Shown here: positions 6,269-63,446 of the stretch, piece by piece
How positions within the stretch are numbered: position 1 is the first letter of the stretch
How the letters are laid out: every line of letters begins with the position of its first letter
Translations under genes and position numbers: made by a program
The notes under the pieces: generated by a model
Seen by the model: only the letters and a program-made list of their open reading frames with translations
Databases searched by the model: none
What the model was told of the DNA's origin: nothing
Origin: Diplonema japonicum
Lineage: Eukaryota > Protista > Euglenozoa: Diplonemea
Direction of reading: 5' to 3'
Assembly (NCBI GenBank): GCA_964019335.1
Contig: OZ025732.1
Location: 62,001 to 126,000 of the forward strand
DNA: 64,000 nucleotides

Positions 6269-7046
6269 TGACTTCACGGGGCAGGAAGAAGGCATCACGG
6301 GCTACCGTCACCCCTCCAACACCTACTTATCTAATAGTGCAATTTAAAAAGAAAGAAAGGAAAGTCCTACTTCTTCTTCTTTCTTTTCTTGTATCGTTGT
6401 CTTTTTCACTTTTCTCTCATTTCCTTTGTTCCTTTTTTTCCCATTCGTCCCCCTGCTGCCCCTTCCGCAAACCTAAACTACCCGTTCAACTTCCCCTCCT
6501 GTTTCTTACTATTTGGACGTTCCAAAACAGGGACCTCCTTTATCTCATCTCTACTATTTTCTTTCTTCTGCATAACATTGCAGTTCCCTGACCTGCTCAT
6601 ATACGTAAGAAAGCCCCCCCCCAAAAAAAACGAACTTATTCTCAGTAAACATTTTAGCCACCCCGATAACGTGATCTTGGGCAGGAAGTCCAGCCTCATT
6701 TTGGGGTGAGCCGCGGACGAGAGTCGTGATTGACGGGAGAGCCCGAACAAGGCGCACCACTGTGTCTCATGGTGTAGAGGAACAGACCAATCGTATTACA
6801 AAAAGCTACAGACAAGCGAGCAAAGTACGCGAGTGTCAATCCTGTGGGGGCTTTTTTACAATGAAGTTTCATCCGATCAAACGATTCTTCACGCACTCAA
6901 CCTCTCATGGGAACACGCACACGTCCCGCAGAGTTGGCGCAACCCAACAAAAACAGAGCACACCTCTGTAACCTAACTGAGAAGCTTTTGAAAACACGGA
7001 GACACGTTCTCTATGCACCTCCTACCCCCAACAACAGAAAATAAAA

Positions 7047-7346
7047 ATGAACGATATGACAGTGTTCGTGAAGACGGGAGGTGGGGTTCACGATGTGGAA
7101 GTGTCGGGGAAGGAGACGGTGGGGAGCCTGTACAAGAAGGCGGGGTGTGCTGCTGGTTTACTCGAAGGCAGGTTCAAACTGGTTTGGGAGGGTGAGGTCC
7201 TTGACAGGAACGGCTGTGAAGAGCTTCATTCACTTGCCCTCTTGGAGGGCTCCGTGGTCCATGTGGAGGAGAACAAGAGGAGAACCGTTCGTCTGGCAGA
7301 GCTGAAGGACGAGAACTCAGGAGTGGTTTCGGAGCTTGAGGGTCTT
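7047..7346 (+). pseudogene. 3'-truncated UBL-LRR gene (UBL only)
   Basis: Near-identical to 1639 and 11520 up to SELEGL, then unrelated sequence. Confidence 0.8.
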
Positions 7347-7523
7347 ACGCTGATATCACGTCAGCTAGGCACTACGGTGCGGGTGGCAGAACACTTCGTT
7401 ATTCTGGCCTTAAAAAGAAATAAAAAAGAAGCTTTTTCCTCTCTTTTAATATCAACATGCACAATTTTATAACAACAAACAACGCAGGAGTTTGAAAGAA
7501 AACAAAAGAAAAGAGACATAACC

Positions 7524-9053
7524 ATGAAAGGAAGCGAAGGACCATCGGCAGTGACGCTGCAGGCGAGGCTCCCCACCTCTGAGACCATCAGCATTGAGGC
7601 AGTGGCTTCGGAGGAGATGATGAAGGTGAAGGAGAGGATCGCATCGATGGGACGGTTGGATGTGGACAGCTTCACCCTCACCTTCGATGGGGAGGTGGTG
7701 GCGGCAGCTGCTGACGACGGCGGTGGGCAGCTTGTCGAAGATCTTCCTTTTGAGGATGGAAGCATGCTTGAAGTGGTGGTGTGCAAGAGGCAGGCGGCTC
7801 TGTTGAAACTCTCTGAGATGGGGATCGAAGTGAAAGGAAGGGACTTGTACGGAGTCTTACGTGATGGCTTACGTGATGGCTTACGTGATGGCTTACGTGA
7901 TGGCTTACGTGATGGCTTACGTGATGGCTTACGTGATGGCTTACGTGATGGCTTACGTGATGGCTTACGTGATGGCTTACGTGATGGCTTACGTGATGGC
8001 TTACGTGATGGCTTACGTGATGGCTTACGTGATGGCTTACGTGATGGCTTACGTGATGGCTTACGTGATGGCTTACGTGATGGCTTACGTGACTTTTCAG
8101 ATGACAGACACAGACACAGACACTTTACAGAGGGGGACGTAATAGAAGACGAGAAGGTTATGAACTGCGAGATTATGAACCTTCTCCTGGATGCTGGGGT
8201 GAGTGGTGGGGAGGAGAAGGTTTTTCACATGGCGGCCCAGCACAATCTTCCTTCTTGTGTGGAGGTCCTCTTGATTCGCACTTCTGTGGACGTGAATTCA
8301 AAAGTGTTTTGCGAAGATTTAAGCACTCCTTCTTGTGTGGACGTGAATTCAGAAATAGGTCTCCCTTACGATTGGGGATGTTCGTATACAGCACTTCACC
8401 GGGCCACTTCTGAGGAGGTGGCGGCTGTTCTCTTGAGACACAATGCAGATGTCAACGCAAGAGACAGTGAAGGTGTTCCTGTCATTCACGGTTCAACAAA
8501 CATGCTTTCTCTACTTCTGAAACACAATGCAGATGTGAATGCGAGAGACTGGGAAGGAAGGACAGTTCTTCATCGCCATGTTGATCCCTCTGCTGTACAC
8601 CTGCTTCTTGAACACAAGGCAGACATCGAAGCAAAAGACAAGGAGGGAAGAACACCCCTGTGCTTGGCTTATCTAAACATGGCAGAAGCACTTCTTGAGC
8701 ACAATGCTGATGTGAAGGCAAGGGACTATAGAGGGAACACGTGTCTGCACCACGCTGTTAAAAGGGGTTATTTAGATGTGTTGCCTGTTCTGCTGAGACA
8801 CAATGCAGATGTGACGGCAAGGAACGATGAAGGGAAGACGGCTCTCGATCTTGTCCACTCTGATGATGATGATGATGATGATGATGGATATAGGGACTTC
8901 AGAGCAGCGACGATGCGATACCTGTTGGAGGACCCGAGTCTCGCTCATGATCTGGAGCTGTTCGAAAGTGGGAGGGAGCTGAGCGACGTCAGCAGGCTTC
9001 CTGTTGTTCAACTGCTTTCAAGGAGTATCGCCCGTTGGGATGAAGAATACTGA
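7524..9053 (+). CDS. UBL + ankyrin-repeat protein with in-frame (LRDG)n expansion
   Basis: UBL-like N-terminus; ankyrin repeats LLxHNADVNARDxEGxTxLH. Confidence 0.85.
   Translation: MKGSEGPSAVTLQARLPTSETISIEAVASEEMMKVKERIASMGRLDVDSFTLTFDGEVVAAAADDGGGQLVEDLPFEDGSMLEVVVCKRQAALLKLSEMGIEVKGRDLYGVLRDGLRDGLRDGLRDGLRDGLRDGLRDGLRDGLRDGLRDGLRDGLRDGLRDGLRDGLRDGLRDGLRDGLRDGLRDGLRDFSDDRHRHRHFTEGDVIEDEKVMNCEIMNLLLDAGVSGGEEKVFHMAAQHNLPSCVEVLLIRTSVDVNSKVFCEDLSTPSCVDVNSEIGLPYDWGCSYTALHRATSEEVAAVLLRHNADVNARDSEGVPVIHGSTNMLSLLLKHNADVNARDWEGRTVLHRHVDPSAVHLLLEHKADIEAKDKEGRTPLCLAYLNMAEALLEHNADVKARDYRGNTCLHHAVKRGYLDVLPVLLRHNADVTARNDEGKTALDLVHSDDDDDDDDGYRDFRAATMRYLLEDPSLAHDLELFESGRELSDVSRLPVVQLLSRSIARWDEEY
7856..8092 (+). 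repeat. Perfect 12-bp tandem repeat (CTTACGTGATGG) x ~19.75
   Basis: Read directly from the sequence; encodes LRDG. Confidence 0.97.
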
Positions 9054-9379
9054 TTGGAGGAGTACGCCCACCGGCAAGCCCCCCGACGAGCCCACCGACT
9101 AGCCGTCTACCTACCCTGCTTCTTCATCCTAACTTAAAACCATTTCAGCTACCTAGCAAGCTAATCAAAAGGCAGCAGGAAGAAAACAAATCAAGTGTAA
9201 ACAAATAGAAAAAAAAAAAAAAAAAAAAAAAAAAAGGAAAGAAAGAAAAAATAACATAAACCCCAACAACCCTCTTCCCCCATGAGCATCAACAAAAAAA
9301 AAAAAAAAAACAAAAAAAAAAAAAAAGAATCCCGAGGACTGGCAACCAAAGGAGAAGAAAAAAAAAAAAAAAAAAAAGA

Positions 9380-9552
9380 AAAGCCATTAGCCAAACAGTG
9401 GAAAGAGAATACCCATGTCACAAAGGTGCTAGAACAATAACACAGGCCGACACGAAAGCACGAACGTCTCAACACACTTCCGTTGGCTCCACACAGCCCA
9501 GCTGGGTGGGGTCGGTCTGGCTAGACCAAGAGGAGGTGGAATTTAAAAAAAA
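9380..9552 (+). mobile_element. Ingi-2 3' end (subfamily B) with GGAATTT-poly(A)
   Basis: Near-identical to 45010-45194, which follows the RNase H ORF at 44184. Partial copy at 16381-16450. Confidence 0.8.
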
Positions 9553-10173
9553 AAGAAAAACTATTTGGACGTTCCAAAACAGGGACCTCCTTTATCTCAT
9601 CTCTACCATTCTGCATAACATTGCAGTTCCCTGACCCGCTCATCCACATAAGAAACCCCCCACATCCAGCACCCCCTGACTGACTATTCAACATATAAGA
9701 AGATGCTGAGGACCGGCACCCTCAGTAGCCTTCAAAAAAAAAAAAAAAAAAAAAAAAAAAAGCCAAACAACCAGCAAAGCTTGTGGAAAAGAGAACACCA
9801 GTACGGTCATGAGTACCCGAGCAACCGGGTAAGCGTCTCGAGACACTTCCAACCCACCTATTGGGTGCGGCCTTAGCATTACGTTCTTCCACTCGGGCGC
9901 TACCGGTGATGACCGACGAGGAGGTCAACAGCGAACAACACATCTGATGTACTTCTTATATTTTCATGTTATTTCCACCACCTTTTTTTTTTTTTTTTTT
10001 TTTTGTCACCCGACTCACCGCAGTGTAGTCGGGGACCAATGCTCGCAATAAGCAATGGGTATTTTTCCAATCATTTTTTTTTACCGACTTGTAATGGAAG
10101 TTCCTACTCGCGAAAGTGGAATCGACTATAAAAAGAAGTCCCACTTCTTCATATTAGTAACGTTGTTTGTTGC

Positions 10174-11236
10174 GGAAACACCCACTCTTCGGTTCCGAGG
10201 CCCCAAGAGGTGACGAGACTAGGACTCCAGGGAGGACCCCTCTCCTGCTCACCTACAACGGGCAGAGGAACAAACGCCCGGAACCCGAAGACGGCCCCGC
10301 CCTTCCCGCGGCCAAACGGGATCTCGCCGCGACGAGGCCGAACACCAGAGTCACTGGACTTGTCGCCCTTAAGAGGCTCACCAGGGAAGCAGACGTCGAC
10401 GGCCCTGAGGACCTGGATGAGCTTCGACACCTGGGCTTCCTTTCCCAGGGCGAGGCCGTCTTTGACCTCAGCTGCATGTCCAGGGCTTGCACACACTTCC
10501 TGGGTGAGACCCCCATGGTCACGGTCCCCCTCGACACACGCGTCGCGATCCCGTGTCTGCTGGTCTGTTATGACTCGACGTGGCTCTACGCTTCCCGCCA
10601 GGAACAGGGCTTTCGGTTGCAGACCCAAGGGTTCAAGGACAAGTCGTATCCGACTGTGGCAGCCCTACTCGCTGACTTCGTGGGGGCAGGGACCCTCTAC
10701 TACAGCGAGTCACAGTGGTCGACTGTGCTGAACTCCTACAACTAGGAACTACTGGAGACGACCCTACGCAATGTAGGAGTGCCGGCCCGGCGTGCTACGA
10801 GGGCGATAGGCTATGCAGGGTCTCACAGACCTCGCACCCTATGATTTTAGTTTCCACCTTTTCCTTTTCCACTTCTTGTCTTTTAACTTCCCTTCTGCTT
10901 TCCCAACATGGTTTCCGTCCCGGGTATGACGTTAAACTGCGTCCGCCGACGCATTTGGGTCAACATTCTCTGATGACCAAGCCGTCTTTCTCCGTTTCTT
11001 CTCCCCTTCTCTTTGTTATGTTATTTTCATTATTCTTTCTGGCGATAGACTGATACGGGCCATGGAAGCAACCTCTGCTTAATTCCTGGTACGTGGGAGG
11101 CTCCTCTTGAGGATGTCAGTCACCTTTTCCCTTTTTTACTCGACTCTCTGTTTTCGTATGCAGTATTTATTCTTTCCCACCCCTTTTTATCTATTTCTTC
11201 GCTTCTTCATCCTAACTTAACTTAAAACCATTTCAG
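10174..11236 (+). mobile_element. Fam-D 5'-truncated retroposon (ORF C-terminus to 10745 + structured 3' UTR ending CTAAC..TTTCAG)
   Basis: Homologous copies at 41469, 45193, 58393 and 62813 have ragged 5' ends and a common 3' end. Confidence 0.8.
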
Positions 11237-11519
11237 TTGCCCCCCCCCCCTCCTTTTTATCTTCTTCACTTTTCTTTCATATCCTTTTCCACTTTTTCCC
11301 ATTCGTCCCCTCCCCCACCCCCTTCACCTACCACCCACCACAGCACGAAGAAGGAAGAAAAAAAGTAGTATTTCATAAGAAGTTATCGGAATTTAGAAAA
11401 AAGAAGAATTGCGTCTCGTTTTTACACATATTTCCTCCTTTGCAAGATCACATTCAAAACACAGGGCTTGAGAGAGAAACGGAGCAGAAACACAACAACA
11501 AAACAAGAAAAAAAAGAAA

Positions 11520-12515
11520 ATGAACGATATGACAGTGTTCGTGAAGACGGGAGGCGGGGTTCACGATGTGGAAGTGTCGGGGAAGGAGACGGTGGGGATC
11601 CTGTACAAGAAGGCGGGGTGTGCTGCTGGTTTACTCGAAGGCAGGTTCAAACTGGTTTGGGAGGGTGAGGTCCTTGACAGGAATGGGGGTGAAGAGCTTC
11701 AGCAACTTGGGCTTGTGGAGGGCTGTGTGGTCCATGTGGAGAACAAGAGGAGAACCGTTCGTCTGGCAGAGCTGAAGGACGAGAACTCAGGAGTGGTTTC
11801 GGAGCTTGAGGGGCTTTTGTCAGCTGACCCTGAGCTTGTTCTGGTGGTGGAGGTGGGGAATATCGAAGTCTTGTCCATGCGCAAGAAACATCTTCCTTCT
11901 GGACTTCGGTTCCTCGTTGTCACCGACCCCACAGGCTGTGTTACAAGGATAGACGAAGCGTTTCTAAACAACTGCGACCACCTGACGTCTGCCGACCTCA
12001 TCCTCCCCAATGTTTCTACCATTGGCCATCAGTTTTTGATATCGTGCAAAAGATTAGAAACCATCGACTTGAATGCGATGACCAATCTTAATTCCATTGG
12101 TAATAGCTTCTTGTCAGGGTGCATACAAGTAGAAACCATCGACTTGAGTTCTATGGCAAATGTTTCTTCTATTTCTAATTTCTTTTTGTCTGGTTGGAAG
12201 AAACTAGAAACTATCGACTTGAGTGCGATGACCAATCTTGATTACATTGGGGATGGTTTCTTGTTTGGGTGCAGTAACTTAGAAACCATCGACTTGAGTG
12301 CGATGGCCAATCTTGATTACATTGGCTCTTACTTTTTGTCAAGGTGCGAAAAACTTGAAACCATCCACATGACTGCGATTACTCTTTCTTTCGTTGGTCA
12401 TTACTTCTTGGATAGGTGCGACAAACTAGAAACCATCGTTTTGAGAGGAGGCACTGATACTTTTAACAGGCTCATAAAGGCTCAGATCCCAACAGGGGTA
12501 AGTATACAGAAATAA
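11520..12515 (+). CDS. UBL + 25-aa LRR protein
   Basis: Paralog of 1639; ends with the same IVLRGGTDTFN..GVSIQK cap. Confidence 0.85.
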   Translation: MNDMTVFVKTGGGVHDVEVSGKETVGILYKKAGCAAGLLEGRFKLVWEGEVLDRNGGEELQQLGLVEGCVVHVENKRRTVRLAELKDENSGVVSELEGLLSADPELVLVVEVGNIEVLSMRKKHLPSGLRFLVVTDPTGCVTRIDEAFLNNCDHLTSADLILPNVSTIGHQFLISCKRLETIDLNAMTNLNSIGNSFLSGCIQVETIDLSSMANVSSISNFFLSGWKKLETIDLSAMTNLDYIGDGFLFGCSNLETIDLSAMANLDYIGSYFLSRCEKLETIHMTAITLSFVGHYFLDRCDKLETIVLRGGTDTFNRLIKAQIPTGVSIQK

Positions 12516-13267: not shown

Positions 13268-13978
13268 ATGAGCCTCGCAGTGTTGATCAGGACTGTCGAC
13301 GAGGATGTGGTGCACGAGGTGGAGCTGGAGAACACGAAGACCTTACGCAAGTAAGAGTGCTGGCCCGGCGAGCTACGAGGGCAAAAAACCTCATTTCTCC
13401 TTGGAGATGAGAACATATATTATAGTGCGACATGATCAGACTGGAACGGCCGCCCCGGGGCATCCTCTGCTCAACCCGGCGGACGTGGGAGGCCCTTCTT
13501 CGGAAGGTGCCAGTCGCTTGATCAGTGTCGTCGAATGCGCGCTATATTTTATATTTTATAAGTACATATAACAATCGATTGAAAGAAGAAGAACGTTTAC
13601 CAAGAGGTGGAGCTGTCTGGGTTTGACAGGGTGAAGGACCTGTACAGGAAGGCGGCAGAGGCTTCTGCGGTGGAGGAGGGGATGTTCCTCTTGCACTTCG
13701 AAGGTGTTGTCTTGGATAATGATGGGACATCTGGCGGTGGTGGGAAGGAGCAGGAGATACAGCAACTTGGGATGGGGCAGGGGAGCGAGCTTCTCTTGTG
13801 CGGTATTCATAATAAACCACTTGATGTCAGTCATGTGGAGCTCTGGAGTCGAAGAGAGGAGATTGCAAGGCTTCTTGAGGAGAATCCTGAGCTTTCTCTT
13901 GCGGTGGATGTCACTGGTCTGGACTGTCTTGATGTCAGGCTCACAAGCAAGCTTCCCTCAAAGCTTCGGCACCTCAAG
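13268..13978 (+). pseudogene. Copy of the 4928-type UBL-LRR gene, interrupted by Fam-C and 3'-truncated
   Basis: Near-identical to 4928-5359 apart from the insertion. Confidence 0.85.
13328..13603 (+). mobile_element. Fam-C retroposon 3' fragment with 12-bp target-site duplication GAGGTGGAGCTG
   Basis: TSD at 13316-13327 and 13604-13615; the empty site is visible in the paralog at ~4976-4987. Confidence 0.9.
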
Positions 13979-17232: not shown

Positions 17233-18012
17233 AAAGAAAATATGAAAAGAAAAAAATAAAGAACGAAACTGCCTCGTCCCCGAACATTCCGTTTTTTTTT
17301 TTAATTAGGGAACGTTACAAGCTTAGAGACTAGTCTCCAAGTTCCTACCCCCCCCCCCCCCCCCCCCCCATTCTCAATCACAGCAGCCACCCGCTCACGT
17401 GCCAAACAGTTGGTTCCTTTTTTTCTTTTCTTCTTTTTTTAAAAATCCACATCCTCACCTCAGTGGTACTGGGAATACAAAAAAAAAATTATATTTTTTA
17501 GTAGGGGGAGGGGGATTAATTATTTTTTTTTTCATTCTGCTTTTTTTTGGAGGAGAAACCGCTGCTGAAAGGGGATAGGTGCAGGTAGAAGATGAGAACA
17601 AGGGGGCGTCTCACAAAGACTTCCTTTAACTCATATATATTTTTTCTTCTTCTTCTTTTTTTTTAAAAAACCTCCCTTCTTCCTCCCCACTGTTTTGGTG
17701 GTGGGGATGACCTGGAGATTTAATGATGTACATCACTAGTAGCATCCTAGTGGAACAACGTTTTTGATTCTCTTTTCTCGCGCTCTCGTGCGACCTATGA
17801 GGCAACGGTTACTGTTCGTGTTCTCTCCCCAGCCTGCTTGCCCTGTTATTAGGTAACTCTAACTTAAAATCATTTCGGTTGCCCTGTTTTAGCATGCAAG
17901 CAGGGTTATTCCTTTAACTATTTTATATTTCTCTCTTTTTTTTTTTATTTTTTTTTTTCTTATTTTATTTTTTATTGATTTCCCAAAAAAAAGGAAAAAA
18001 AAGAAAAAAAAA

Positions 18013-20065: not shown

Positions 20066-20578
20066 AAGTGGAGCGCCAAACTAGTTTTCTCTTTGTTTTT
20101 GTAGCAGTGCTTTGTGCAGTATTTATTCTTTCCCACCCCTTTTTATCTATTTCTTCGCTTCTTCATCCTAACTTAAAACCATTTCAGGTGCCAGGACGCC
20201 ACGAACAACCGGCCTCCTTTATTTTCTTTTTTCTTTCTTTCCTTTCTTTTTTTTTTTTTTTTTTTGTTTCTTTTTTTTTTTTTTTTTTTTCCCTTCCCTC
20301 TTTGTTTTATTTTTGGAAAAAAAAAAAAAAAAGAAAAAAAAAAAGAGTAGAGGCAGCTTGTCTGTTTTATCCTTCGTAGGCCTCTTCTTCTCTTCTTTTT
20401 TTTTTTTCTTTTTTTTTTTTCGTGGGAAAAGATGTTCTGAAATGGATCCGAACGGTACCGTGCACAAGGGTGCACACACTACGATTCATCGGGACCGGAT
20501 CGTGAAGCATGACCTAGAGGCGTTAAGAATGGTGGATAGGTGCAGGTGGAGGACGGGAACAAGGGGGCGAGCCTCCTT

Positions 20579-20617
<39 letters not shown>

Positions 20618-21787
20618 CATATTTTGCTGCAGGTAGTGGATGAAAAACAAGGGAGCGTCTCAAAAGACTTTCCTTTGGAGGAAAGACCCAAACAAATCTT
20701 TTTTCCAAGATCTGCTGAAAAGTCCAAAAGAAAAAAAGATGCCGTCTGTACCTTTGTTTAATTTTCGCTTTATTCTAACTTACAATCATTTCAGGTACCT
20801 TTGTCTAATCCAGCTAGCAGTCAACCTTTCCAAATGTCGCATCTTGTCAGGGCAACAATTCTGTCTTGAAGAATGCGCCTTTTTTTTTTCTTTTTTTTTT
20901 TTTTCTTATAAGTAGAGACAAGGGGGACTTTCCAAGACAGGAACCTCCTTTATCTCATCTCTTTTTTTTTTTTCTTCCGAACAGAAAACAGAATTCTATT
21001 ATCGAGGCAGCAGTTGCAAGAACAAAAGGAACGAGGCTACCCTGTCGCAAAAAAAAAAAAAAAAAAAAAAAAAAGATCTCTGAAAGAAAAAAAATCGTTT
21101 TTTTTTTTTTTTAAACATTTCTTTAAAGCCCCATTTCTTTTTTTTTTTTTTTTATCTTTTGCTGCAGCATTGAACAGAAAGAGTGTTGCAAAGAGTCGGG
21201 GGGGAACCCCCCCCCCCCCCCCCCCGTCTTCCTCTCTCCACCCTTTTTTTTTAAAAAGAAAACACAGAATAAAGCAAGAACTTCTTAAACGAAAGGAATT
21301 TAAAAAAAAAAAATACTTCAGCTTGTAGGACGTTTAACTCGGTAACCCTAACTCTTTCTCCCCCCGTTGCAAAAAGAAAAAAAAAAAAAAGAAAAAATGC
21401 TACTGGAAGAATCTTCTTGTCATTTTTTTTTTCTTTTTTTTTTTTTTTTTTATTTCACCCTTCGTCATTTTCTTCACTCACTAGGGGCCTCATAATTTAA
21501 CGCGAAATGCGGGCCCTCGTGCAAAAAATTCGGGAACTCGAGTTAAATAATGACTCATAATTTGTTGGCAATAAATAGCTATATTTAGCAGTGATTGGAG
21601 ATAACATAAAGAAAGAGTTCGACAGCTGCAAACATTGCCAGACACATACGACGGCTATGTCGCCGATGATCTGATGGTGGAAGCCGGCACAGCCGCCGAA
21701 AAAGAAAGAGAAACCGCTGCTGAAAGGGGATAGGTGCAGGTAGTGGTTAAGGGACGTCTCACAAAAGACTTCCTTTAGCTCATAAAT

Positions 21788-40958: not shown

Positions 40959-41468
40959 TGTTGTTTCTTTTTCTTATTTTTCTTTCTATCTTAAAATTTT
41001 TAATCTTCCTAGTTTAAAAGTTTAAAAGAAAGAAAATGAAAAAGATTGTTTGATATGGGTTCTAGGTTTTTAGAAAAAAAAAAAAAGAAAGAACATATTC
41101 CGAGGGTGGTTTAGGAAAGAGAAAACTTTTTCTTTCTTTTTATTTTTCTTTTTTCTTTTCCCCCCCTCCATCTCTTCCTCTCAAGTTTGATAGCCCTCCC
41201 TCCCCCCCCACTTTCTTGAACTTCTTTTCACCTCTTTCCCCCCCTACCTCTCCGTGGTTCCCAGTGAACATGAAAGAAGTGAAAGTAAATAAAAAAAGCC
41301 TTTCCCGTCCCTTGTTCACTCCGCCGTGCACCCCGATATCCTCCTCCCTTTAGTTTCTTCCCCCTAGTTTCGCACGGGTGGGTCCATTGTTATTTGCCAA
41401 AAAAAAAAAAAAAAAAAAAAAAAAAGTGTAAAGTGTTAAACAGCCAGCAAAGCTTGTGGAAAGAGAAC

Positions 41469-42861
41469 GGGAAACGGGATGTGGAGCTCATGCAAATAGA
41501 CAACGCCAGCACACAGCCGCTGCCGTGGGTACGCAATGTGGAGGGAAGGAGATGCCTCGTGCAAACGGCGGGGGAGCTCGAAGGAGTGGGAGGAATCGTC
41601 GCAGAATTCTTGAACCCGCTGCTGCAGTGGTTGTCACAGCTACGATGGGTGAAGGAGGACACCAGCTCTGAAGTGTCAGCGGTGGAATTGGCCATCGACT
41701 TCGAATGGACGACAGGCAAGTTACTGGGAGGTCTGCTGGAAGATAGGGCTCGCAAGATGAAAGCACTGATAAGAAAGCTGAACGCGGCATGCAGGGCACG
41801 GAAGAAGCCACGCCCCTTCCCAGCGGCAGAGAGTGAAGTCCCTCATCGCAATAGGTGGGAAGACGGCTATGGGTTTCGCCAGGAGGCCCATCTTCGCCAC
41901 CCACTCCACGCACGACAAGCTGATGGAACTGAAAGCCGCTTACAAGCTAGACCGCATCACACGACTCCGCAAGACGCTCAAGGCCTCGATTGGAACGAAG
42001 CACCCGCTCTTTGACTCCGAGACCCCAGGAGGCGATAAAGCTAGGCCTTCGGGGAAGACCCCTCTCCTGATCACCTACAACGTACGAACAAACGCCCGAG
42101 CCCGAGGACGGTCCCGCACTCCCCGCGGCCAAGCGAGATCTCGCTGCGACGCGGCCGAACACCAGGATCACTGGGCTCGTCGCCCTCCGGAGGCTCACCA
42201 AGGATGCAGGCGTTGACGGCCCTGAGGACCTGGATGAGCTTCGACATCTGGGCTTTCTTTCCAAGGGCGAGGCCATTTTTGACCCCAATTGCATGTCCAG
42301 GGCGTGCACTCACTTCTTGGGTGAGGCCCCCCTGGTCGCGGTCCCCCTCGACACACGGGTTGCGATCCCGTGCCTGCTGATCTGTCACGGCTCGACGTGG
42401 CACTACGCATCCCGCCAGGAACAGGGCTTTCTGCTGCAAACCCAAGGGTTCGGGGACAAGTCCTACTCGACCGTGGCAGCCCTGCTCGCTGACTTTGTAG
42501 GGGCCGGGACCCTCTATTACAACGAATCGCAGTGGTCGACTGTCCTGCATTCCTACAACTAGGAACAATCGGAAACAACCCTACACAATACAATGTAGGA
42601 GTGCCGGCCCGGCGTGCTACGAGGGCGATAGGCTATGCAAGGTTTCACAGACCTCGCACCCTATTATTTAGTTTCCACCCTTTCCGTTTTCTTTCCAATT
42701 TTAAGCTTGTTATTACCCTTTCTGCTTTTTCCTTTTCCTACATGTTTTCGGTCCCGGGTATGACGTTAAACTGCGTCCGCCGACGCGTCTGAACCAGCAC
42801 TTCCTTCTTTTCCTTTTTCGCTTCGTTCCGTTATTTTCATTATTCTTTCCGGCGATAGACT
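41469..42861 (+). mobile_element. Longest Fam-D copy (frameshifted ORF to 42562; 3' end displaced by Ingi-2)
   Basis: Extends the 10174 ORF upstream (ELAIDFEWTTGKLL...). Confidence 0.8.
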
Positions 42862-45194
42862 ACAGCAGGGCGGCGGAGATCTGTCCGGGGTACTACAGGA
42901 GATTGCAGCGTTGAAGGCACAACAACAACAGCAAGCACAGCAACAAGCCCAACAACAAAAACAAGCGCAGGACGAGCATAACCACAGGCTGCAGAACATG
43001 ACAGGACTACGACAGGAAGTGGCACAAATTAAGACAGCCCAAACAGAACAAAGCGCCGTCTTAGAAAAACAACACCACCAGCAACAACAACAACTACTGG
43101 AATGGCAGCAGAGGCAAGAAAAGCAGAGAGACGCATGGAAACAAGAGCAGGAACAGAAGCAACAGGGGCTCGACGGGAAGATTGAGACCCTGAAGGCCGA
43201 GGTAGGGGGTGTGACGTCGGTCCTGCAGCAGCTACAGGAGACCATGAACCTCGTACTGAAAAACACAGCGGGGGTACAGGAGGCCGTGGCAGCAGCGACA
43301 GCCGCACAACAAGAAGCGATGCTGGCAACGGAATCAGCCAAAGCAGCAACGAAGGCGGCGACAACAGCAACGGCCGCACTCCCCACACCACAGCCAACAG
43401 AGAAAATACTGCAACAACAACAGCAACAGCAGCCACCCCAAGAGCCAACGCAAACAAGAAGGGAACCGGAAGAGGCACCAGGGAAGGTGGCACAGAAGTT
43501 CGTAAGATCGCGGTCAAGCGAAAGGCCGCCTCAAATGAAGAACCCCAAAGAGGGGGTAAACCTTGACAAGCAGGCAGAGGGGAGAAAAGAACTGGGGAAG
43601 AAGGTGGCCGGAAACAGGCGAGCACAAGCACAGAACGAAAAAAGGTCCCAAACACCGGAACCAATACAAGTGCACGTGCTGAAGAGACCCCAACAAAGGG
43701 GATATGAAACGCGGGCCAACCCCAAACAACCCCAACAAAACCGTCCCCTGCAACAACAACATCAACCCCGCATCTCAAGCAGCATCAAGCGCAGACGAGG
43801 AAGTGGCCTCAAGCCAAGAACATCAACAAAAACAGCAAAGTCCTATACAACACCACCCCGACAAGCAGCAAACAGCGCAGGGGTGTAAAGAAATAGAAAA
43901 AACCACTTGTCAAGCAGCGTCAAGCGCGGACAAAAAGAAAGAAGCAACATGCCAAGGAACATCAACAACCTCGCAACAAATTCCCCGCCAAGCAGCACCA
44001 AGCGCAGACGAGGAGAGAGCAGGGCAAAACACCCCACAAGCAACAACAACGCCGACACCCACACAAGAGCAGCAGCCCCAAAGAACACCCACACCACGCA
44101 CTCCATCAGAAAGATGGATCCCGCCTACACCATCATCGTATCGCAGACATGCAGAGGTGGCAGCATTGATAACAGGGTAACGAATGGAGGGAACCAGCGG
44201 GCACAGGGCGGCGCAGGGGAAGTGCAAAAACGAGAGGTTATGGCTACACAAAGCTAGACAGAAAGAGAGCACCCTGAAGATGGAAGAGAACGAGCGTGCA
44301 CCACTGCACAGAAAGGCAGCGATCCCACCGTGGGAGTGGGAAATCTTGAAAAATCTAACGATACGGACGGAAGGGAGCAGAGTGAAAAAACTCGAGCAGG
44401 CAGAACAGAAGAAAGCTGCCCTGCAGACAATCGCCAAACTACCCAAGGCCGACTACACGGTGTACACCGACGGATCAGTAGCAGACGGCACGGGGGGCGC
44501 AGGCATCTTGATTGAACACGCGGGTGGCACCGTTGAACTGAGCAGGGGTGTGTGCGAACTTTGCGACAGCTACCAGGCAGAGATGACGGCGATAGGCACC
44601 GCACTAGCACACATGGTCCAGAAGGAAGCACAAGGGAAGCAGATCAACCTCCTGACGGACTCGATGGCATGCCTGCAGAAATTGAAGCAGGTACCAGCAG
44701 GGCAACAGGAAGACATGGTGGTCGAGGTGTGGCACAGCATACATGTCCTTCTAAAAAATAAGAACCGCATCACCTGCTGTTACATCCCGGTCACTGCGGA
44801 ATAGAAGGTAACGAGAAGGCAGATGAACTCGCCGAGCAAGGTAGGGATAAGGAAGCGACGCAGAGGATAAGCCTGAACGCGGCGAAGAACTACCTGCAGA
44901 AGACGACGAAGGCGGAGATAAGAACAGGGCTCGATAAAAATCGAGAATACAACAAGTGGACGAAGGGGAGAGAGGCACCGAAGCGGATGGAAAAAAAAAA
45001 AAAAAAAAGAAAAGCCATTAGCCAACAGTGGAAAGAGAATACCCATGTCACAAAGGTGCTAGAACAATAACACAGGCCGACACGAAAGCACGAACGTCTC
45101 AACACACTTCCGTTGGCTCCACACAGCCCAGCTGGGTGGGGTCGGTCTGGCTAGACCAAGAGGAGGTGGAATTTAAAAAAAAAAAAAAAAAAAA
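42862..45194 (+). mobile_element. Internally deleted Ingi-2 (Gln-rich ORF1-like 42911-43888, RNase H remnant 44184-44990, subfamily B 3' end)
   Basis: RNase H is homologous to 135-1223; endonuclease and RT are absent. Assigning the Gln-rich ORF as ORF1 is inference. Confidence 0.7.
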
Positions 45195-45963
45195 TTGCAT
45201 GTCCAGGGCGTGCACTCACTTCTTGGGTGAGGCCCCCCTGGTCGCGGTCCCCCTCGACACACGGGTTGCGATCCCGTGCCTACTGGTCTGTCACGGCTCG
45301 ACGTGGCACTACGCATCCCGCCAGGAACAGGGCTTTCTGCTGCAAACCCAAGGGTTCGGGGACAAGTCCTACTCGACCGTGGCAGCCCTGCTCGCTGACT
45401 TTGTAGGGGCCGGGACCCTCTATTACAACGAATCGCAGTGGTCGACTGTCCTGCATTCCTACAACTAGGAACAATCGGAAACAACCCTACACAATGTAGG
45501 AGTGCCGGCCCGGCGTGCTACGAGGGCGATAGGCTATGCAAGGTTTCACAGACCTCGCACCCTATTATTTAGTTTCCACCCTTTCCGTTTTCTTTCCAAT
45601 TTTTAAGCTTGTTATTACCCTTTCTGCTTTTTCCTTTTCCTACATGTTTTCGGTCCCGGGTATGACGTTAAACTGCGTCCGCCGACGCGTCTGAACCAGC
45701 ACTTCCTGGCGACCAGGCCGTCTTTTCCCTTTTCCTACTTCACTTCGTTCCGCTATTTTCATTATTCTTTCCGGCGATAGACTGATACGGGCCATGGAAG
45801 CAACCTCTGCTTAATTCCTGGTACGTGGGAGGCTCCTCTTGAGGATGTCAGTCACCTTTTCCCTTTTTTATTCGACTCTCTGTTTTCGTATGCAGTATTT
45901 ATTCTTTTCCACCCCTTTTTATCTGTTTCTTCGCTTCTTCATCCTAACTTAAAACCATTTCAG
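45193..45963 (+). mobile_element. Fam-D copy ending TTTCAG inside a UBL-ankyrin gene
   Basis: Followed directly by CCACCTCTGAGACC of the UBL coding sequence. Confidence 0.88.
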
Positions 45964-46576
45964 CCACCTCTGAGACCATCAGCATTGAGGCAGTGGCTTC
46001 GGAGGAGATGAAGAAGGTGAAGGAGAGGATCGCATCGATGGGAGGGTTGGATGTGGACAGCTTCACCCTCACCTTCGATGGGGAGGTGGCGGCTGCTGCT
46101 GACGACGGCGGTGGACAGCTCGTCGGAGATCTTCCATTTGAGGATGGAAGCATGCTTGAAGTGGTGGTGTGCAAGAGGCAGGCGGCTCTGTTGAAACGAG
46201 GGAAGAACACCCCTTTTTTTTACTAATAGTTTAAAGGTAGCGGAAGCACTTCTTGAGCACAATGCTGATGTGAAGGCAAGGGACAATGAAGGGAACACCT
46301 GTCTGCACTACGCTGTTGAAAGAGGTTGGTTCGAAGTGTTACCTGTTCTGCTGAGACACAATGCAGATGTGACGGCAAGGAACGATGAAGGGAAGACGCC
46401 TCTCGATCTTGTCCCCTCTGTGTGATGAGGACATTACCAAAGCGATGCGATACCTGTTGGAGGACCCGAGTCTCGCTCATGATCTGGAGCTGTTCGAAAG
46501 TGGGAGGGAGCTGAGCGACGTCAGCAGGCTTTCTGTTGTTCAACTGATTTCAAAGTGTATTAACATGAGTTGGTGA
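45964..46576 (+). pseudogene. Deleted UBL-ankyrin pseudogene
   Basis: Pieces homologous to 7524-9053, with stops and frameshifts. Confidence 0.85.
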
Positions 46577-56543: not shown

Positions 56544-57859
56544 GCGCGAAGCGCGGGCAGTTGTGCGACGGACAAGCGGAACCCGCAAAGAAGAAAGACC
56601 GCTTGGACCTCCTCAGGGCGAACCGACGGTCGGGCAAGGCCGCCGTTCACGCCCTGGCTGAAGAACATCGAGCGGGTCTGGAAGATAAGCTCTCCCACAC
56701 GAAACTGGCGACGGCCGGGATCGTCGAAGCGGAAGGGGAGTGGACGCCAGAAGCCATGATACGGGTCTGCAAACACGTCCTCGGCGAAGAGCCTAAAACC
56801 GCGAAGGAACTCGGGATTCACATGAAGTTTGTCCGGTTCGCCCTCATCCTGGACTTTGACAAGACGTGGATCATGGCCAGGTATGACTCGGAAGGCTGGA
56901 AGGCGAAGGGGGACGTCGAGAGACGGCAGCAGTTCACGCGGCACGGAGATATGAGAGCCTTGAAGGATCACTACTTCGTGGCCACTGACTGGCTGTTCTT
57001 CACCACGAGAACATATATTATAGTGCGACATGATCAGACTGGAACGTCACCATGAGAACATATATTATAGTGCGACATGATCAGACTGGAACGTCACCAT
57101 GAGAACATATATTATAGTGCGACATGATCAGACTGGAACGTCACCATGAGAACATATATTATAGTGCGACATGATCAGACTGGAACGTCACCATGAGAAC
57201 ATATATTATAGTGCGACATGATCAGACTGGAACGTCACCATGAGAACATATATTATAGTGCGACATGATCAGACTGGAACGTCACCATGAGAACATATAT
57301 TATAGTGCGACATGATCAGACTGGAACGTCACCATGAGAACATATATTATAGTGCGACATGATCAGACTGGAACGTCACCATGAGAACATATATTATAGT
57401 GCGACATGATCAGACTGGAACGTCACCATGAGAACATATATTATAGTGCGACATGATCAGACTGGAACGTCACCATGAGAACATATATTATAGTGCGACA
57501 TGATCAGACTGGAACGTCACCATGAGAACATATATTATAGTGCGACATGATCAGACTGGAACGTCACCATGAGAACATATATTATAGTGCGACATGATCA
57601 GACTGGAACGTCACCATGAGAACATATATTATAGTGCGACATGATCAGACTGGAACGTCACCATGAGAACATATATTATAGTGCGACATGATCAGACTGG
57701 AACGGCCGCCCCGGGGCATCCTCTGCTCAACCCGGCGGACGTGGGAGGCCCTTCTTCGGAAGGTGCCAGTCGCTTGATCAGTGTCGTCGAATGCGCGCTA
57801 TATTTTACATTTTATAAGTACATATAACAATCGATTGAAAGAAGAAGAACGTTTACCAA
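56544..57859 (+). mobile_element. Fam-C retroposon (ORF C-terminus + 3' UTR with internal 47-bp amplification)
   Basis: 3' part matches 13409-13603; ORF homologous to the Fam-D ORF. Confidence 0.8.
57000..57704 (+). repeat. 47-bp tandem repeat x15 (TCACCATGAGAACATATATTATAGTGCGACATGATCAGACTGGAACG)
   Basis: 705 bp = 15 x 47; no spacers; the first unit has one mismatch. Confidence 0.97.
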
Positions 57860-58392: not shown

Positions 58393-59032
58393 AGGAACAG
58401 GGCTTTCTGCTGCAAACCCAAGGGTTCGGGGACAAGTCCTACTCGACCGTGGCAGCCCTGCTCGCTGAATTTGTAGGGGCCGGGACCCTCTATTACAACG
58501 AATCGCAGTGGTCGACTGTCCTGCATTCCTACAACTAGGAACAATCGGAAACAACCCTACACAATGTAGGAGTGCCGGCCCGGCGTGCTACGAGGGCGAT
58601 AGGCTATGCAAGGTTTCACAGACCTCGCACCCTATTATTTAGTTTCCACCCTTTCCATTTTCTTTCCAATTTTAAACTTGTTTTTACCCTTTCTTCTTTT
58701 TCCTTTTCCTACATGTTTTCGGTCCCGGGTATGACGTTAAACTGCGTCCGCCGACGCGTCTGAACCAGCACTTCCTGGCGACCAGGCCGTCTTTTCTCTT
58801 TTCCTTTTTCACTTCGTTCCGTTATTTTCATTATTCTTTCCGGTGATAGACTGATACGGGCCATGGAAGCAACCTCTGCTTAATTCCTGGTACGTGGGAG
58901 GCTCCTCTTGAGGATGTCAGTCACCTTTTTCCTTTTTTATTCGACTCTCTGTTTTCGTATGCAGTATTTATTCTTTTCCACCCCTTTTTATCTATTTCTT
59001 CGCTTCTTCATCCTAACTTAAAACCATTTCAG
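58393..59032 (+). mobile_element. Fam-D copy ending TTTCAG
   Basis: Matches 45323-45963. Confidence 0.88.
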
Positions 59033-62525: not shown

Positions 62526-62812
62526 CCACATATTATTTGCCTGATGCCGCTCTCGTCCTGGGGAGAAGGACCTTTGGCGTTTCTTCGGTGTGACAGGGCC
62601 CCCCAAAAGGGGTTCGTGAGCACGTTCACTCACTTCGTTTCCTCTCTTCATGGTGAATTCTTTTTCCTCGCTTTTAGTATCAACATGCCCAAATATATAT
62701 CAACAAGCAACACAGGATGTTGAAAGAAAAATAGAAACGAGACAAAACCATGAAAGGAAGCGAAGGACCATCGGCAGTGACGCTGCAGGCGAGGCTCCCC
62801 ACCTCTGAGACC

Positions 62813-63446
62813 AGGGCTTTCTGCTGCAAACCCAAGGGTTCGGGGACAAGTCCTACTCGACCGTGGCAGCCCTGCTCGCTGACTTAGTAGGGGCCGGGAC
62901 CCTCTATTACAACGAGTCGCAGTGGTCGACTGTCCTGCATTCCTACAACTAGGAACAATCGGAAACAACCCTACACAATGTAGGAGTGCCGGCCCGGCGT
63001 GCTACGAGGGCGATAGGCTATGCAAGGTTTCACAGACCTCGCACCCTATTATTTAGTTTCCACCCTTTCCATTTTCTTTCCAATTTTAAACTTGTTTTTA
63101 CCCTTTCTTCTTTTTCCTTTTCCTACATGTTTTCGGTCCCGGGTATGACGTTAAACTGCGTCCGCCGACGCGTCTGAACCAGCACTTCCTGGCGACCAGG
63201 CCGTCTTTTCTCTTTTCCTTTTTCACTTCGTTCCGTTATTTTCATTATTCTTTCCGGTGATAGACTGATACGGGCCATGGAAGCAACCTCTGCTTAATTC
63301 CTGGTACGTGGGAGGCTCCTCTTGAGGATGTCAGTCACCTTTTTCCTTTTTTATTCGACTCTCTGTTTTCGTATGCAGTATTTATTCTTTTTCACCCCTT
63401 TTTATCTATTTTTTCGCTTCTCTATTCTAACTTAAAATCATTTCAG
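62813..63446 (+). mobile_element. Fam-D copy inserted after the 5' end (62750-62812) of a UBL-ankyrin gene
   Basis: Left flank CCACCTCTGAGACC; ends TTTCAG followed by CCACCT. Confidence 0.88.

What the first reader, a model, noticed from the sequence alone, without database searches (positions are those of the whole stretch)
11130..11242. Tailless retroposon family (Fam-D) whose 3' end is exactly a spliceosomal 3' splice site
Seen: copies have ragged 5' ends (10174, 41469, 45193, 58393, 62813 and tiny tips), the usual LINE truncation pattern. They stop at one point with no poly(A): pyrimidine tract - CTAAC - TTAAAACCATTT - CAG (ends at 9148, 11236, 20187, 20794, 45963, 59032, 63446; TTTCGG variant at 17878). 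Known: CTAAC is the branch-point consensus and YAG the acceptor, and excised introns and trans-splicing outrons end at the AG without poly(A). Inference: the element RNA may be cut out of a polycistronic transcript by the cis or SL-trans spliceosome, which defines the template 3' end. Each insertion would also give the downstream host sequence a new acceptor. A GTATGA donor-like site lies at ~10924.
Basis: partly seen in the sequence, partly recalled or inferred. Interest (0 to 1): 0.92.

Follow-up and report, generated by a model that had tools for sequence, protein, structure and literature searches.

The report
Penelope-like retroelement with splice-acceptor-like end
The repeat is a truncated copy of a roughly 7.9 kb Penelope-like retrotransposon in a diplonemid-type protist; such elements normally lack poly(A) tails, so its splice-acceptor-looking end is interesting but need not be made by the spliceosome.

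Summary
All Fam-D copies stop at ...CCTAAC-TTAAAACCATTT-CAG without poly(A), and their 5' ends are ragged.

The class is wrong. Fam-D is not a LINE. It is a roughly 7.9 kb Penelope-like element (PLE) with one 2152-aa ORF: N-terminal GIY-YIG endonuclease, CxC motif, then reverse transcriptase (Naiad/Chlamys type). Its closest relatives are in Diplonema papillatum.

- All 8 full-length bodies are preceded by a pseudo-LTR: a partial copy of the element's own 3' end, up to about 410 nt, ending in the same CAG.
- Target-site duplications of 4-21 bp start directly after the CAG.
- Taillessness, 5' truncation and pseudo-LTRs are normal for this family, so no spliceosome is needed to explain them.
- All 41 distinct 3' flanks follow Y-Y-R-C-C-Y. 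This is what could pair, with wobble, with UUGCCU, the hexamer that follows the CAG at the pseudo-LTR/body junction. It suggests the template RNA runs past the CAG.
- A sister PLE family here shares a covarying 3'-UTR RNA domain but ends ...GTTTACCAA, with no pyrimidine tract.

A working SL acceptor is plausible, about 40%. The terminal AG is the first AG after the last long pyrimidine tract. It is untested because no RNA data were usable.

Other first-stage notes of this scan reached the PLE reading on other DNA of this genome.

The parts
10174..11236 (+). 5'-truncated Fam-D copy, 1,063 bp, equal to positions 6837-7894 of the 7,894-nt reference copy L040:300-8193. It is 99% identical to the young subfamily.
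10176..10745 (+). Last 189 codons and the stop codon of the PLE ORF (C-terminal domain of the 2152-aa GIY-YIG/CxC/RT protein).
10823..10829 (+). Position matching the start of the pseudo-LTR (tctc|ACAGACCTCGC). It is a hot spot of copy 5' ends: 5 independent copies start within 7 nt. Inferred to be a discrete RNA 5' end, either a transcription start or a processing site.
10922..10928 (+). GGTATGA donor-like site inside a 46-nt block that is invariant between the young and old subfamilies. No spliced form was seen.
11041..11124 (+). Structured RNA domain shared with the sister PLE family: closing helix GACUGR/YCAGUC plus two hairpins. 8 of 26 pairs show compensatory changes. Candidate RT-recognition element.
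   Evidence: no Rfam match
11118..11126 (+). Internal CAG|TCACCT site that fits the target rule. Recurrent nested insertions occur here, giving ...TTTCAG|TCACCTTTT... tandem tips.
   Evidence: L003, L004, L023, L028
11130..11236 (+). The reported stretch: pyrimidine-rich tail, CTAAC (11212-16, with a private 5-nt duplication at 11217-21), then TTAAAACCATTTCAG. The terminal AG is the first AG in 73 nt.
11237..11242 (+). TTGCCC: host flank that fits the Y-Y-R-C-C-Y rule. TTGC is repeated at 10170-10173, a probable 4-bp TSD.
11237..11345 (+). The host's own ~105-nt pyrimidine tract followed by its first AG, 175 nt before the ATG at 11520. The copy sits at the upstream edge of a host intergenic processing region.
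9118..9148 (+). 31-nt tip of Fam-D, flank CTACCT.
20115..20187 (+). 73-nt tip of Fam-D, flank GTGCCA.
41997..42861 (+). Old-subfamily copy (~81% identical) that lacks the 3' end.
45196..45963 (+). Old-subfamily copy (~86%), flank CCACCT, inserted in the 5' part of an ankyrin-gene paralogue.
58393..59032 (+). Old-subfamily copy (~86%), flank GAGCCT.
62809..63446 (+). Old-subfamily copy (~85%), flank CCACCT.
13329..13607 (+). It has the same two conserved 3'-UTR motifs but ends ...GAAGAACGTTTACCAA.
56700..57858 (+). Second sister-family 3' end, with a 47-nt tandem array (57007-57690) inside its 3' UTR.

Best explanation
**What it is.** Fam-D is an autonomous Penelope-like retroelement of the N-terminal-endonuclease (Naiad/Chlamys-like) kind. 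It lives in a euglenozoan genome whose spliced leader is of the diplonemid type.

**Structure of a full unit.**
- A pseudo-LTR of up to about 410 nt, which is a copy of the element's own 3' end and finishes in ...TTTCAG.
- A 7.87 kb body that starts TTGCCTCTAAC.
- A 952-nt leader and one 2152-aa ORF (GIY-YIG, CxC, RT, a Cys/His protease-like region and a C-terminal domain).
- A 490-nt 3' UTR ending in the same CAG.

**How it copies (inferred from the anatomy and from what is known of PLEs).**
- An RNA starts about 405 nt before the CAG of the upstream pseudo-LTR.
- The GIY-YIG enzyme nicks the target.
- cDNA synthesis begins exactly at the G of CAG, next to a target hexamer Y-Y-R-C-C-Y.
- Synthesis often stops early, giving ragged 5' ends.
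- Second-strand cleavage 4-21 bp away makes the TSD.

**What sets the precise tailless end.** The position where reverse transcription starts sets it. This is probably guided by the conserved structured RNA 115 nt upstream and by pairing of the nicked DNA with the hexamer after the CAG. RNA cleavage at the AG is not required.

**The acceptor look.** The tail (pyrimidine tract, then the first AG at the terminus) may still be functional. In the pseudo-LTR/body arrangement it lies where an SL acceptor, or the 3' end of a 5'-UTR intron, would serve the element's own mRNA. I put that at about 40%. It is inferred, not shown.
For: **Protein and relatives.**
- GIY-YIG and RVT_1 lie in one ORF with GIY-YIG N-terminal.
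- The alignment with relatives shows an invariant CxC and the DK, PYLYGTLKLHK, GIPMG and YIDD motifs.
- A profile of that alignment hits the I-TevI GIY-YIG domain and an RT in the PDB.
- 1951 relatives were found. The best are Diplonema papillatum proteins.

**Element structure.**
- All 8 body starts in the genome are preceded by ...CCATTTCAG, 24 to ~410 nt of pseudo-LTR.
- One whole unit is flanked by an 18-bp TSD (L043).
- Truncated copies carry TSDs of 4-21 bp that begin right after the CAG.
- There is a tail-to-tail inverted pair (L020).
- No canonical hammerhead was found.
- All of these match the published description of Naiad/Chlamys PLEs (PMC8557442).

**Flank rule.**
- In 41 distinct flanks, +4 is C in 41, +5 is C in 39, +3 is R in 38, +2 is Y in 36 and +6 is Y in 38.
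- Positions +7 to +10 are random.
- The body start TTGCCT fits the rule.

**Sister family.** It shares the covarying RNA domain but ends in GTTTACCAA.

**5' ends.** They cluster at element positions 7485-7491.
Against: - No RNA data were available, so the RNA 5' and 3' ends, the SL site and any intron are inferred only.
- The flank rule could reflect the endonuclease's own sequence preference rather than RNA-DNA pairing. Position +1, next to the first copied base, is the least constrained, which is odd for a primer 3' end.
- The last ~220 nt are about 97% conserved between subfamilies whose ORFs are ~85% identical. The tail is therefore under constraint of some kind, which a spliceosomal role would also explain.
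- RT and GIY-YIG Pfam scores are near or below the curated cut-offs. Family assignment rests on motif order and relatives, not on a tree with reference PLEs.
Confidence: 0.75

Rival explanations
1. The spliceosome (SL trans-splicing or cis-splicing) cuts at the terminal AG. The released upstream RNA, ending in CAG-3'OH, is the template, so splicing defines the element's 3' end.
For: - The end is a pyrimidine tract + CTAAC + the first AG, exactly at the terminus.
- The host uses SL trans-splicing.
- The terminal ~220 nt are more conserved than the ORF.
Against: - PLEs in hosts without such a terminus are equally tailless (PMC8557442).
- The sister family in the same genome has a precise tailless end with no pyrimidine tract or acceptor.
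- The YYRCCY rule matches pairing with UUGCCU 3' of the CAG, which an RNA ending at the AG would lack.
- If acceptors were used on template RNA, full-length copies should start with SL fused to TTGCCT. 0 of 8 do; all carry pseudo-LTR sequence.
- An outron would carry a 2'-5' branch about 20 nt from its end.
Confidence: 0.07
2. The tail is a working portable processing module and nothing more. It has no role in 3'-end definition. It supplies an SL acceptor (and, by coupling, an upstream poly(A) site) to the element's own body in the pseudo-LTR arrangement and to whatever lies downstream of each insertion, as reported for SIRE in Trypanosoma cruzi.
For: - The terminal AG is the first AG after the final long pyrimidine tract, about 20 nt downstream of it.
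- The cluster of copy 5' ends, 405 nt upstream and 80 nt after the stop codon, lies just before the first pyrimidine tract, where a coupled poly(A) site would be expected. This rests on kinetoplastid coupling of trans-splicing and polyadenylation (PMC4006747).
- All window copies are co-oriented with the host ORFs.
- 10 of 13 flanks with a >300-aa open frame have that frame on the same strand.
Against: - There are no RNA data.
- The body leader would be 952 nt with 12 upstream ATGs, and it holds another pyrimidine tract + AG 360 nt before the start codon.
- The sister family manages without such a tail.
- At 11237 the host already has its own pyrimidine tract and AG.
- Co-orientation may simply follow from a pyrimidine-rich target motif.
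Confidence: 0.4
3. Fam-D is a non-LTR (LINE) element, or an LTR/DIRS-type element whose terminal repeats are true LTRs.
For: - 5' truncation and TSDs resemble a LINE.
- The terminal direct repeat resembles an LTR.
Against: - No APE/RLE endonuclease, integrase, protease/RNase H or tyrosine recombinase was found. GIY-YIG is present instead.
- The upstream repeats vary in length (24, 227, 291 and ~405-410 nt).
- Short tips of any length occur, unlike solo LTRs.
Confidence: 0.02

Closest known systems
Chlamys / Naiad: N-terminal GIY-YIG Penelope-like elements (Craig, Yushenova, Rodriguez, Arkhipova 2021, PMC8557442)
   Same: - Domain order GIY-YIG, CxC, RT.
- The DK motif.
- Frequent 5' truncation.
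- Pseudo-LTRs formed by a partial upstream copy.
- Inverted adjacent copies.
- No poly(A) tail and no canonical hammerhead.
- Size within the 3.3-8.2 kb reported for Chlamys.
- In Chlamys-3_cRei the transcription start lies in the pseudo-LTR, and a 5'-UTR intron spans the pseudo-LTR/body boundary. That is the same place as this acceptor-like end.
   Different: - The host is a euglenozoan with a diplonemid-type SL. That paper mentions no Euglenozoa.
- The target is a YYRCCY hexamer rather than a microsatellite.
- The ORF carries a Cys/His protease-like region (USP-type in relatives) and a long C-terminal extension.
- The terminus coincides exactly with an acceptor-like AG.
- I did not place it between Naiad and Chlamys by phylogeny.
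Penelope (Drosophila virilis) and canonical C-terminal EN+ PLEs
   Same: - Pseudo-LTRs.
- Transcription start and a small 5'-UTR intron inside the pseudo-LTR.
- Introns retained in new copies.
- Tailless ends (as summarised in PMC8557442).
   Different: - Canonical PLEs carry the endonuclease at the C-terminus.
- They have hammerhead ribozymes in the pseudo-LTR.
- Both features are absent here.
SIRE/VIPER of Trypanosoma cruzi
   Same: A dispersed retroelement fragment in an SL-trans-splicing host whose 3' part can supply a trans-splicing acceptor to downstream genes. This is from my memory of Vazquez et al. 1994, Mol Biochem Parasitol; I could not retrieve the paper here.
   Different: - VIPER is a tyrosine-recombinase element with split direct repeats (PMC6681497).
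- It has no GIY-YIG, no ragged 5' truncation and a different mechanism.
- Acceptor use is shown for SIRE but not for Fam-D.
EN-minus PLEs (Athena, Coprina) and telomerase
   Same: They prime by pairing a DNA 3' end with a short RNA stretch at the template's 3' side: reverse-complement telomeric repeats (PMC8557442). This resembles the pairing I infer with UUGCCU.
   Different: - Those elements lack an endonuclease and attach to telomeres.
- Here pairing is only inferred from flank statistics.

Membership tests
Penelope-like elements, N-terminal EN+ clade (Naiad/Chlamys) | GIY-YIG endonuclease N-terminal to the RT in one ORF | tested here: met
   - Pfam GIY-YIG matches residues 263-303 and RVT_1 matches 955-1037 of the 2152-aa ORF.
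- 4 of 10 aligned relatives hit GIY-YIG.
- A profile of the alignment hits the I-TevI catalytic domain, E 0.07.
- Scores are weak, near the cut-offs.
Penelope-like elements, N-terminal EN+ clade (Naiad/Chlamys) | CxC motif in the linker between EN and RT | tested here: met
   An invariant C-x-C (NCPCSKRK...HEGHAC) is present in all 10 aligned sequences.
Penelope-like elements, N-terminal EN+ clade (Naiad/Chlamys) | PLE-type RT (DK(G) motif, telomerase-like core) that groups with PLE RTs in a tree | tested here: inconclusive
   - DK, LHK, GIPMG and YIDD motifs are present.
- No tree with reference PLE/TERT sequences was made.
- The single-sequence PDB search was blank.
Penelope-like elements, N-terminal EN+ clade (Naiad/Chlamys) | Pseudo-LTR: the full-length copy is preceded by a 5'-truncated copy of its own 3' end | tested here: met
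   8 of 8 body starts are preceded by 24 to ~410 nt of the 3' end.
Penelope-like elements, N-terminal EN+ clade (Naiad/Chlamys) | Frequent 5' truncation, no poly(A), variable TSD | tested here: met
Penelope-like elements, N-terminal EN+ clade (Naiad/Chlamys) | Lack of a canonical hammerhead ribozyme (this distinguishes the clade from canonical PLEs) | tested here: met
   - The Rfam scan of a full unit at E<=1 gave no ribozyme.
- The manual CUGANGA...GAAA scan found nothing.
Non-LTR retrotransposons (LINE) | APE or restriction-like endonuclease with a LINE-type RT | tested here: not met
   No such domain is present in the intact ORF.
   - No run is on record as RNA.
- The runs laid were contigs.
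- One possibly-RNA contig crosses the GTATGA site unspliced.

The most novel reading that the evidence does not exclude
Fam-D has adapted the PLE pseudo-LTR to euglenozoan gene expression. Its last ~400 nt would be a complete portable processing region, ending in a real SL trans-splice acceptor. That acceptor would cap the element's own mRNA and re-cap whatever lies downstream of each insertion.

Reverse transcription would be primed telomerase-style, by wobble pairing of the nicked target with the UUGCCU hexamer just 3' of that acceptor.

Probability: 0.25. Interest if true: 0.8.

Novelty: new member of a known kind. Interest (0 to 1): 0.5.

Why it matters
**New host lineage.** PLEs with an N-terminal endonuclease were described in 2021 from animals, green plants and a slime mould. 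Surveys of trypanosomatids and Bodo list only CRE, ingi, TATE and VIPER (PMC12278014). The Diplonema genome paper does not mention PLEs, and its PLE proteins carry misleading names such as kinesin-like protein 3, USP26 and V-ATPase a3. A young, intact family in a diplonemid-type genome extends the clade to Euglenozoa. Copies are 99% identical and at least one ORF is intact.

**A model for PLE initiation.** How these hammerhead-less PLEs pick their 3' end is unknown. This family offers three leads:
- a clean flank rule (C at +4 in 41 of 41 flanks)
- a covarying 3'-UTR RNA domain
- a discrete 5'-end hot spot

**Effect on host genes.** If the acceptor-like tail is used, each of the many insertions rewires trans-splicing of neighbouring genes.

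Tried and rejected
- **Trypanosoma cruzi SIRE/VIPER.** This was my first guess, from the composition and the acceptor idea. I rejected it once the ORF showed GIY-YIG + RT and the SL proved to be diplonemid-type.
- **Hammerhead or other known ribozyme defining the ends.** None was found.
- **RNA evidence.** The one run search found no RNA run. The four runs laid were contigs, three of them DNA-like. No GTATGA-to-CAG joint and no SL loose end was seen. That is no evidence of absence.
- **Word-based protein search.** It was blank. The exhaustive HMMER search then found 1951 relatives.
- **Acceptor-like ends in other diverged PLE families and in Diplonema copies.** This was blocked. Only one sister family, already held in L044 and the window, could be examined.
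- **Orientation versus host ORFs.** The 1.5 kb flanks give only a weak trend.
- **Fold of the last 227 nt.** It is not more stable than shuffles, z = -0.86.

Full report
**1. The observation**

The stretch 11130-11236 is pyrimidine-rich and ends ...CATCCTAACTTAACTTAAAACCATTTCAG.
- The same end, without this copy's private 5-nt duplication, occurs at 45963, 59032, 63446, 20187 and 9148.
- Degenerate versions occur at 20794 and 17878.
- Each is followed by unrelated sequence and none has poly(A).
- In the whole assembly (62.5 Mb, 132 contigs; the window is C85:62001-126000) at least 46 matches end at the same G, most 98-99% identical.
- Their 5' ends are scattered.
- One correction: the copy listed from 41469 starts at 41997. 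41469-41999 belongs to another high-copy repeat.

**2. The full element**

I walked upstream from long copies. I used one natural copy as the ruler (L040:300-8193, 7,894 nt) and built no consensus.

Seven further copies reach the same body start, TTGCCTCTAACTGCAC. In every one of the 8 body starts in the genome, the bases just before are ...CCATTTCAG, the element's own 3' end.
- This upstream piece is 24, 227 or 291 nt long in three copies.
- In four copies it is 404-410 nt long.
- One whole unit (upstream piece + body + 3' end) is flanked by an 18-bp duplication, CACCTACCTTTTTGGATG (L043). The unit therefore inserted in one event.
- This is a pseudo-LTR, not an LTR. Its length varies, and isolated tips of any length occur.

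**3. What it encodes**

An intact copy has a single 2152-aa ORF (L042:795-7253, minus strand).
- Pfam finds GIY-YIG at residues 263-303 and RVT_1 at 955-1037. Both are weak.
- An exhaustive HMMER search found 1951 relatives.
- The best relatives are Diplonema papillatum proteins, with names that hide their nature.
- The alignment shows G-I-I-Y...Y-x-G-Q-T, an invariant CxC, and the DK, PYLYGTLKLHK, GIPMG-N-SPDLANLF and YIDD motifs.
- The alignment profile touches the I-TevI GIY-YIG domain, an RT and, in the relatives, USP deubiquitinases in the PDB.

This domain order comes with pseudo-LTRs, 5' truncation, an inverted tail-to-tail pair (L020), no poly(A) and no hammerhead. Together these are the published description of Naiad/Chlamys PLEs (PMC8557442).

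**4. The host**

The genome holds 232 copies of CAGTTTCTGTACTTTATTG. The full leader reads ACCAACGATTCTAAAGCTACAGTTTCTGTACTTTATTG. From memory this is the diplonemid type, and it agrees with the nearest protein relatives.

**5. How the 3' end is set**

- Truncated copies have TSDs that begin directly after the CAG: 21 bp in L029, 15 bp in L027, 11 bp in L023, and shorter ones elsewhere. The CAG is therefore the true last base.
- Among 41 distinct flanks the next six bases follow Y-Y-R-C-C-Y, with 32, 36, 38, 41, 39 and 38 of 41 complying. Positions +7 to +10 are random.
- These are exactly the top-strand bases whose complements can pair, allowing G-U and G-T wobble, with RNA 5'-UUGCCU-3'. UUGCCU is the hexamer that follows the CAG at the pseudo-LTR/body junction. 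A random hexamer would fit the rule about 1 time in 128.
- I infer that the nicked target pairs with RNA just 3' of the CAG. If so, the template runs past the CAG. Any copy's read-through transcript carries such a hexamer, because its flank was selected by the same rule.
- The alternative is a sequence preference of the endonuclease. The loosest position, +1, favours neither model clearly.
- An internal CAG|TCACCT at 11118-11126 fits the rule and is a recurrent site of nested insertion.

**6. A sister family as a control**

Its C-terminal domain is 29% identical to Fam-D's.
- It shares two 3'-UTR motifs with Fam-D.
- The second motif (window 11041-11124) folds into a closing helix plus two hairpins, with compensatory changes in 8 of 26 pairs.
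- Fam-C copies also end precisely and without a tail, but at ...GAAGAACGTTTACCAA, with no pyrimidine tract.
- In this genome a precise tailless PLE end therefore does not need an acceptor-like sequence.

**7. Is the acceptor look meaningful?**

For:
- The terminal AG is the first AG in 73 nt and follows the final long pyrimidine tract by about 20 nt.
- The last ~220 nt are about 97% conserved between subfamilies whose ORFs differ by ~15%.
- The GGTATGA block is conserved too.
- In Penelope and Chlamys-3_cRei the pseudo-LTR holds the transcription start and a 5'-UTR intron at the same boundary.
- 5' ends of five independent copies cluster at element positions 7485-7491 (window ~10826), which points to a discrete RNA start.

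Against:
- No full-length copy begins with SL.
- The leader would be 952 nt with 12 upstream ATGs and has another candidate acceptor.
- The host already has its own pyrimidine tract and AG right after the insertion.
- There are no RNA data. The only possibly-RNA contig crosses the donor-like site unspliced.

I rate a working acceptor at about 40% and a spliceosome-made template end at about 7%.

**8. Limits**

- Other first-stage notes of this scan had already read PLEs, the NNRCC flank and the covarying RNA on this and other DNA of the genome. I checked each of these myself.

Noticed in passing
window 11041-11124 and 13437-13518 (also 57692-57773): A structured RNA domain shared by two PLE families whose C-terminal domains are only ~29% identical. 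It has a closing helix GACUGR/YCAGUC, two hairpins and an invariant GUGGGAGG that could pair with the invariant loop CCUCU (pseudoknot). 8 of 26 pairs are compensatory. There is no Rfam match.
   Followed up: partly
window 10775-10805 and 13354-13382: A second conserved motif just after the stop codon of both families: GAGTGCYGGCCCGGCGWGCTACGAGGGC.
   Followed up: no
window 57007-57690: A tandem array of about 14 units of 47 nt inside the 3' UTR of a sister-family (Fam-C) copy. It duplicates the 5' half of the conserved RNA domain.
   Followed up: no
L042:2814-3416 (minus strand), residues ~1280-1480 of the ORF: A Cys/His protease-like region (GLECGWAVINWL ... SGHWFIALRKKG) lies after the RT. 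Relatives carry USP-type deubiquitinase domains instead (Pfam UCH in 5 of 10). Other scan notes call it Josephin-like. My PDB sequence search was blank.
   Followed up: partly
L054-L059 (six places on contigs C1, C2 and C3): Complete spliced-leader exons are fused to unrelated sequences at dispersed sites. There are 232 SL matches genome-wide, many near contig ends. These are retro-copies of trans-spliced RNAs.
   Followed up: no
window 41430-41999; also 9398-9634 and 45028-45190: Other retroposon families. One is a high-copy repeat (over 300 candidates, 97% identical) that ends at 41999, right where an old Fam-D copy begins. Another is an A-rich-tailed element 3' end that abuts Fam-D at 45190. 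An RNase H ORF lies at 44184-44804.
   Followed up: no
proteins P0001, P0002 and P0162 (Diplonema papillatum, GenBank KAJ94...): PLE polyproteins in the public Diplonema annotation are named Kinesin-like protein 3, Ubiquitin carboxyl-terminal hydrolase 26 and V-type proton ATPase subunit a3. These are probably gene models fused with, or named after, TE-borne domains.
   Followed up: no
window 7524-9053 and 45964-46020: An ankyrin-repeat gene with a (GLRD)n run. A paralogue has an old Fam-D copy inserted in its 5' coding part, after ...PT|SETISIEAV.
   Followed up: no
L020 (C85:225451-225835): Two Fam-D 3' ends lie tail to tail, 34 nt apart, separated by a C20 run. This is the inverted arrangement typical of PLEs.
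   Followed up: no
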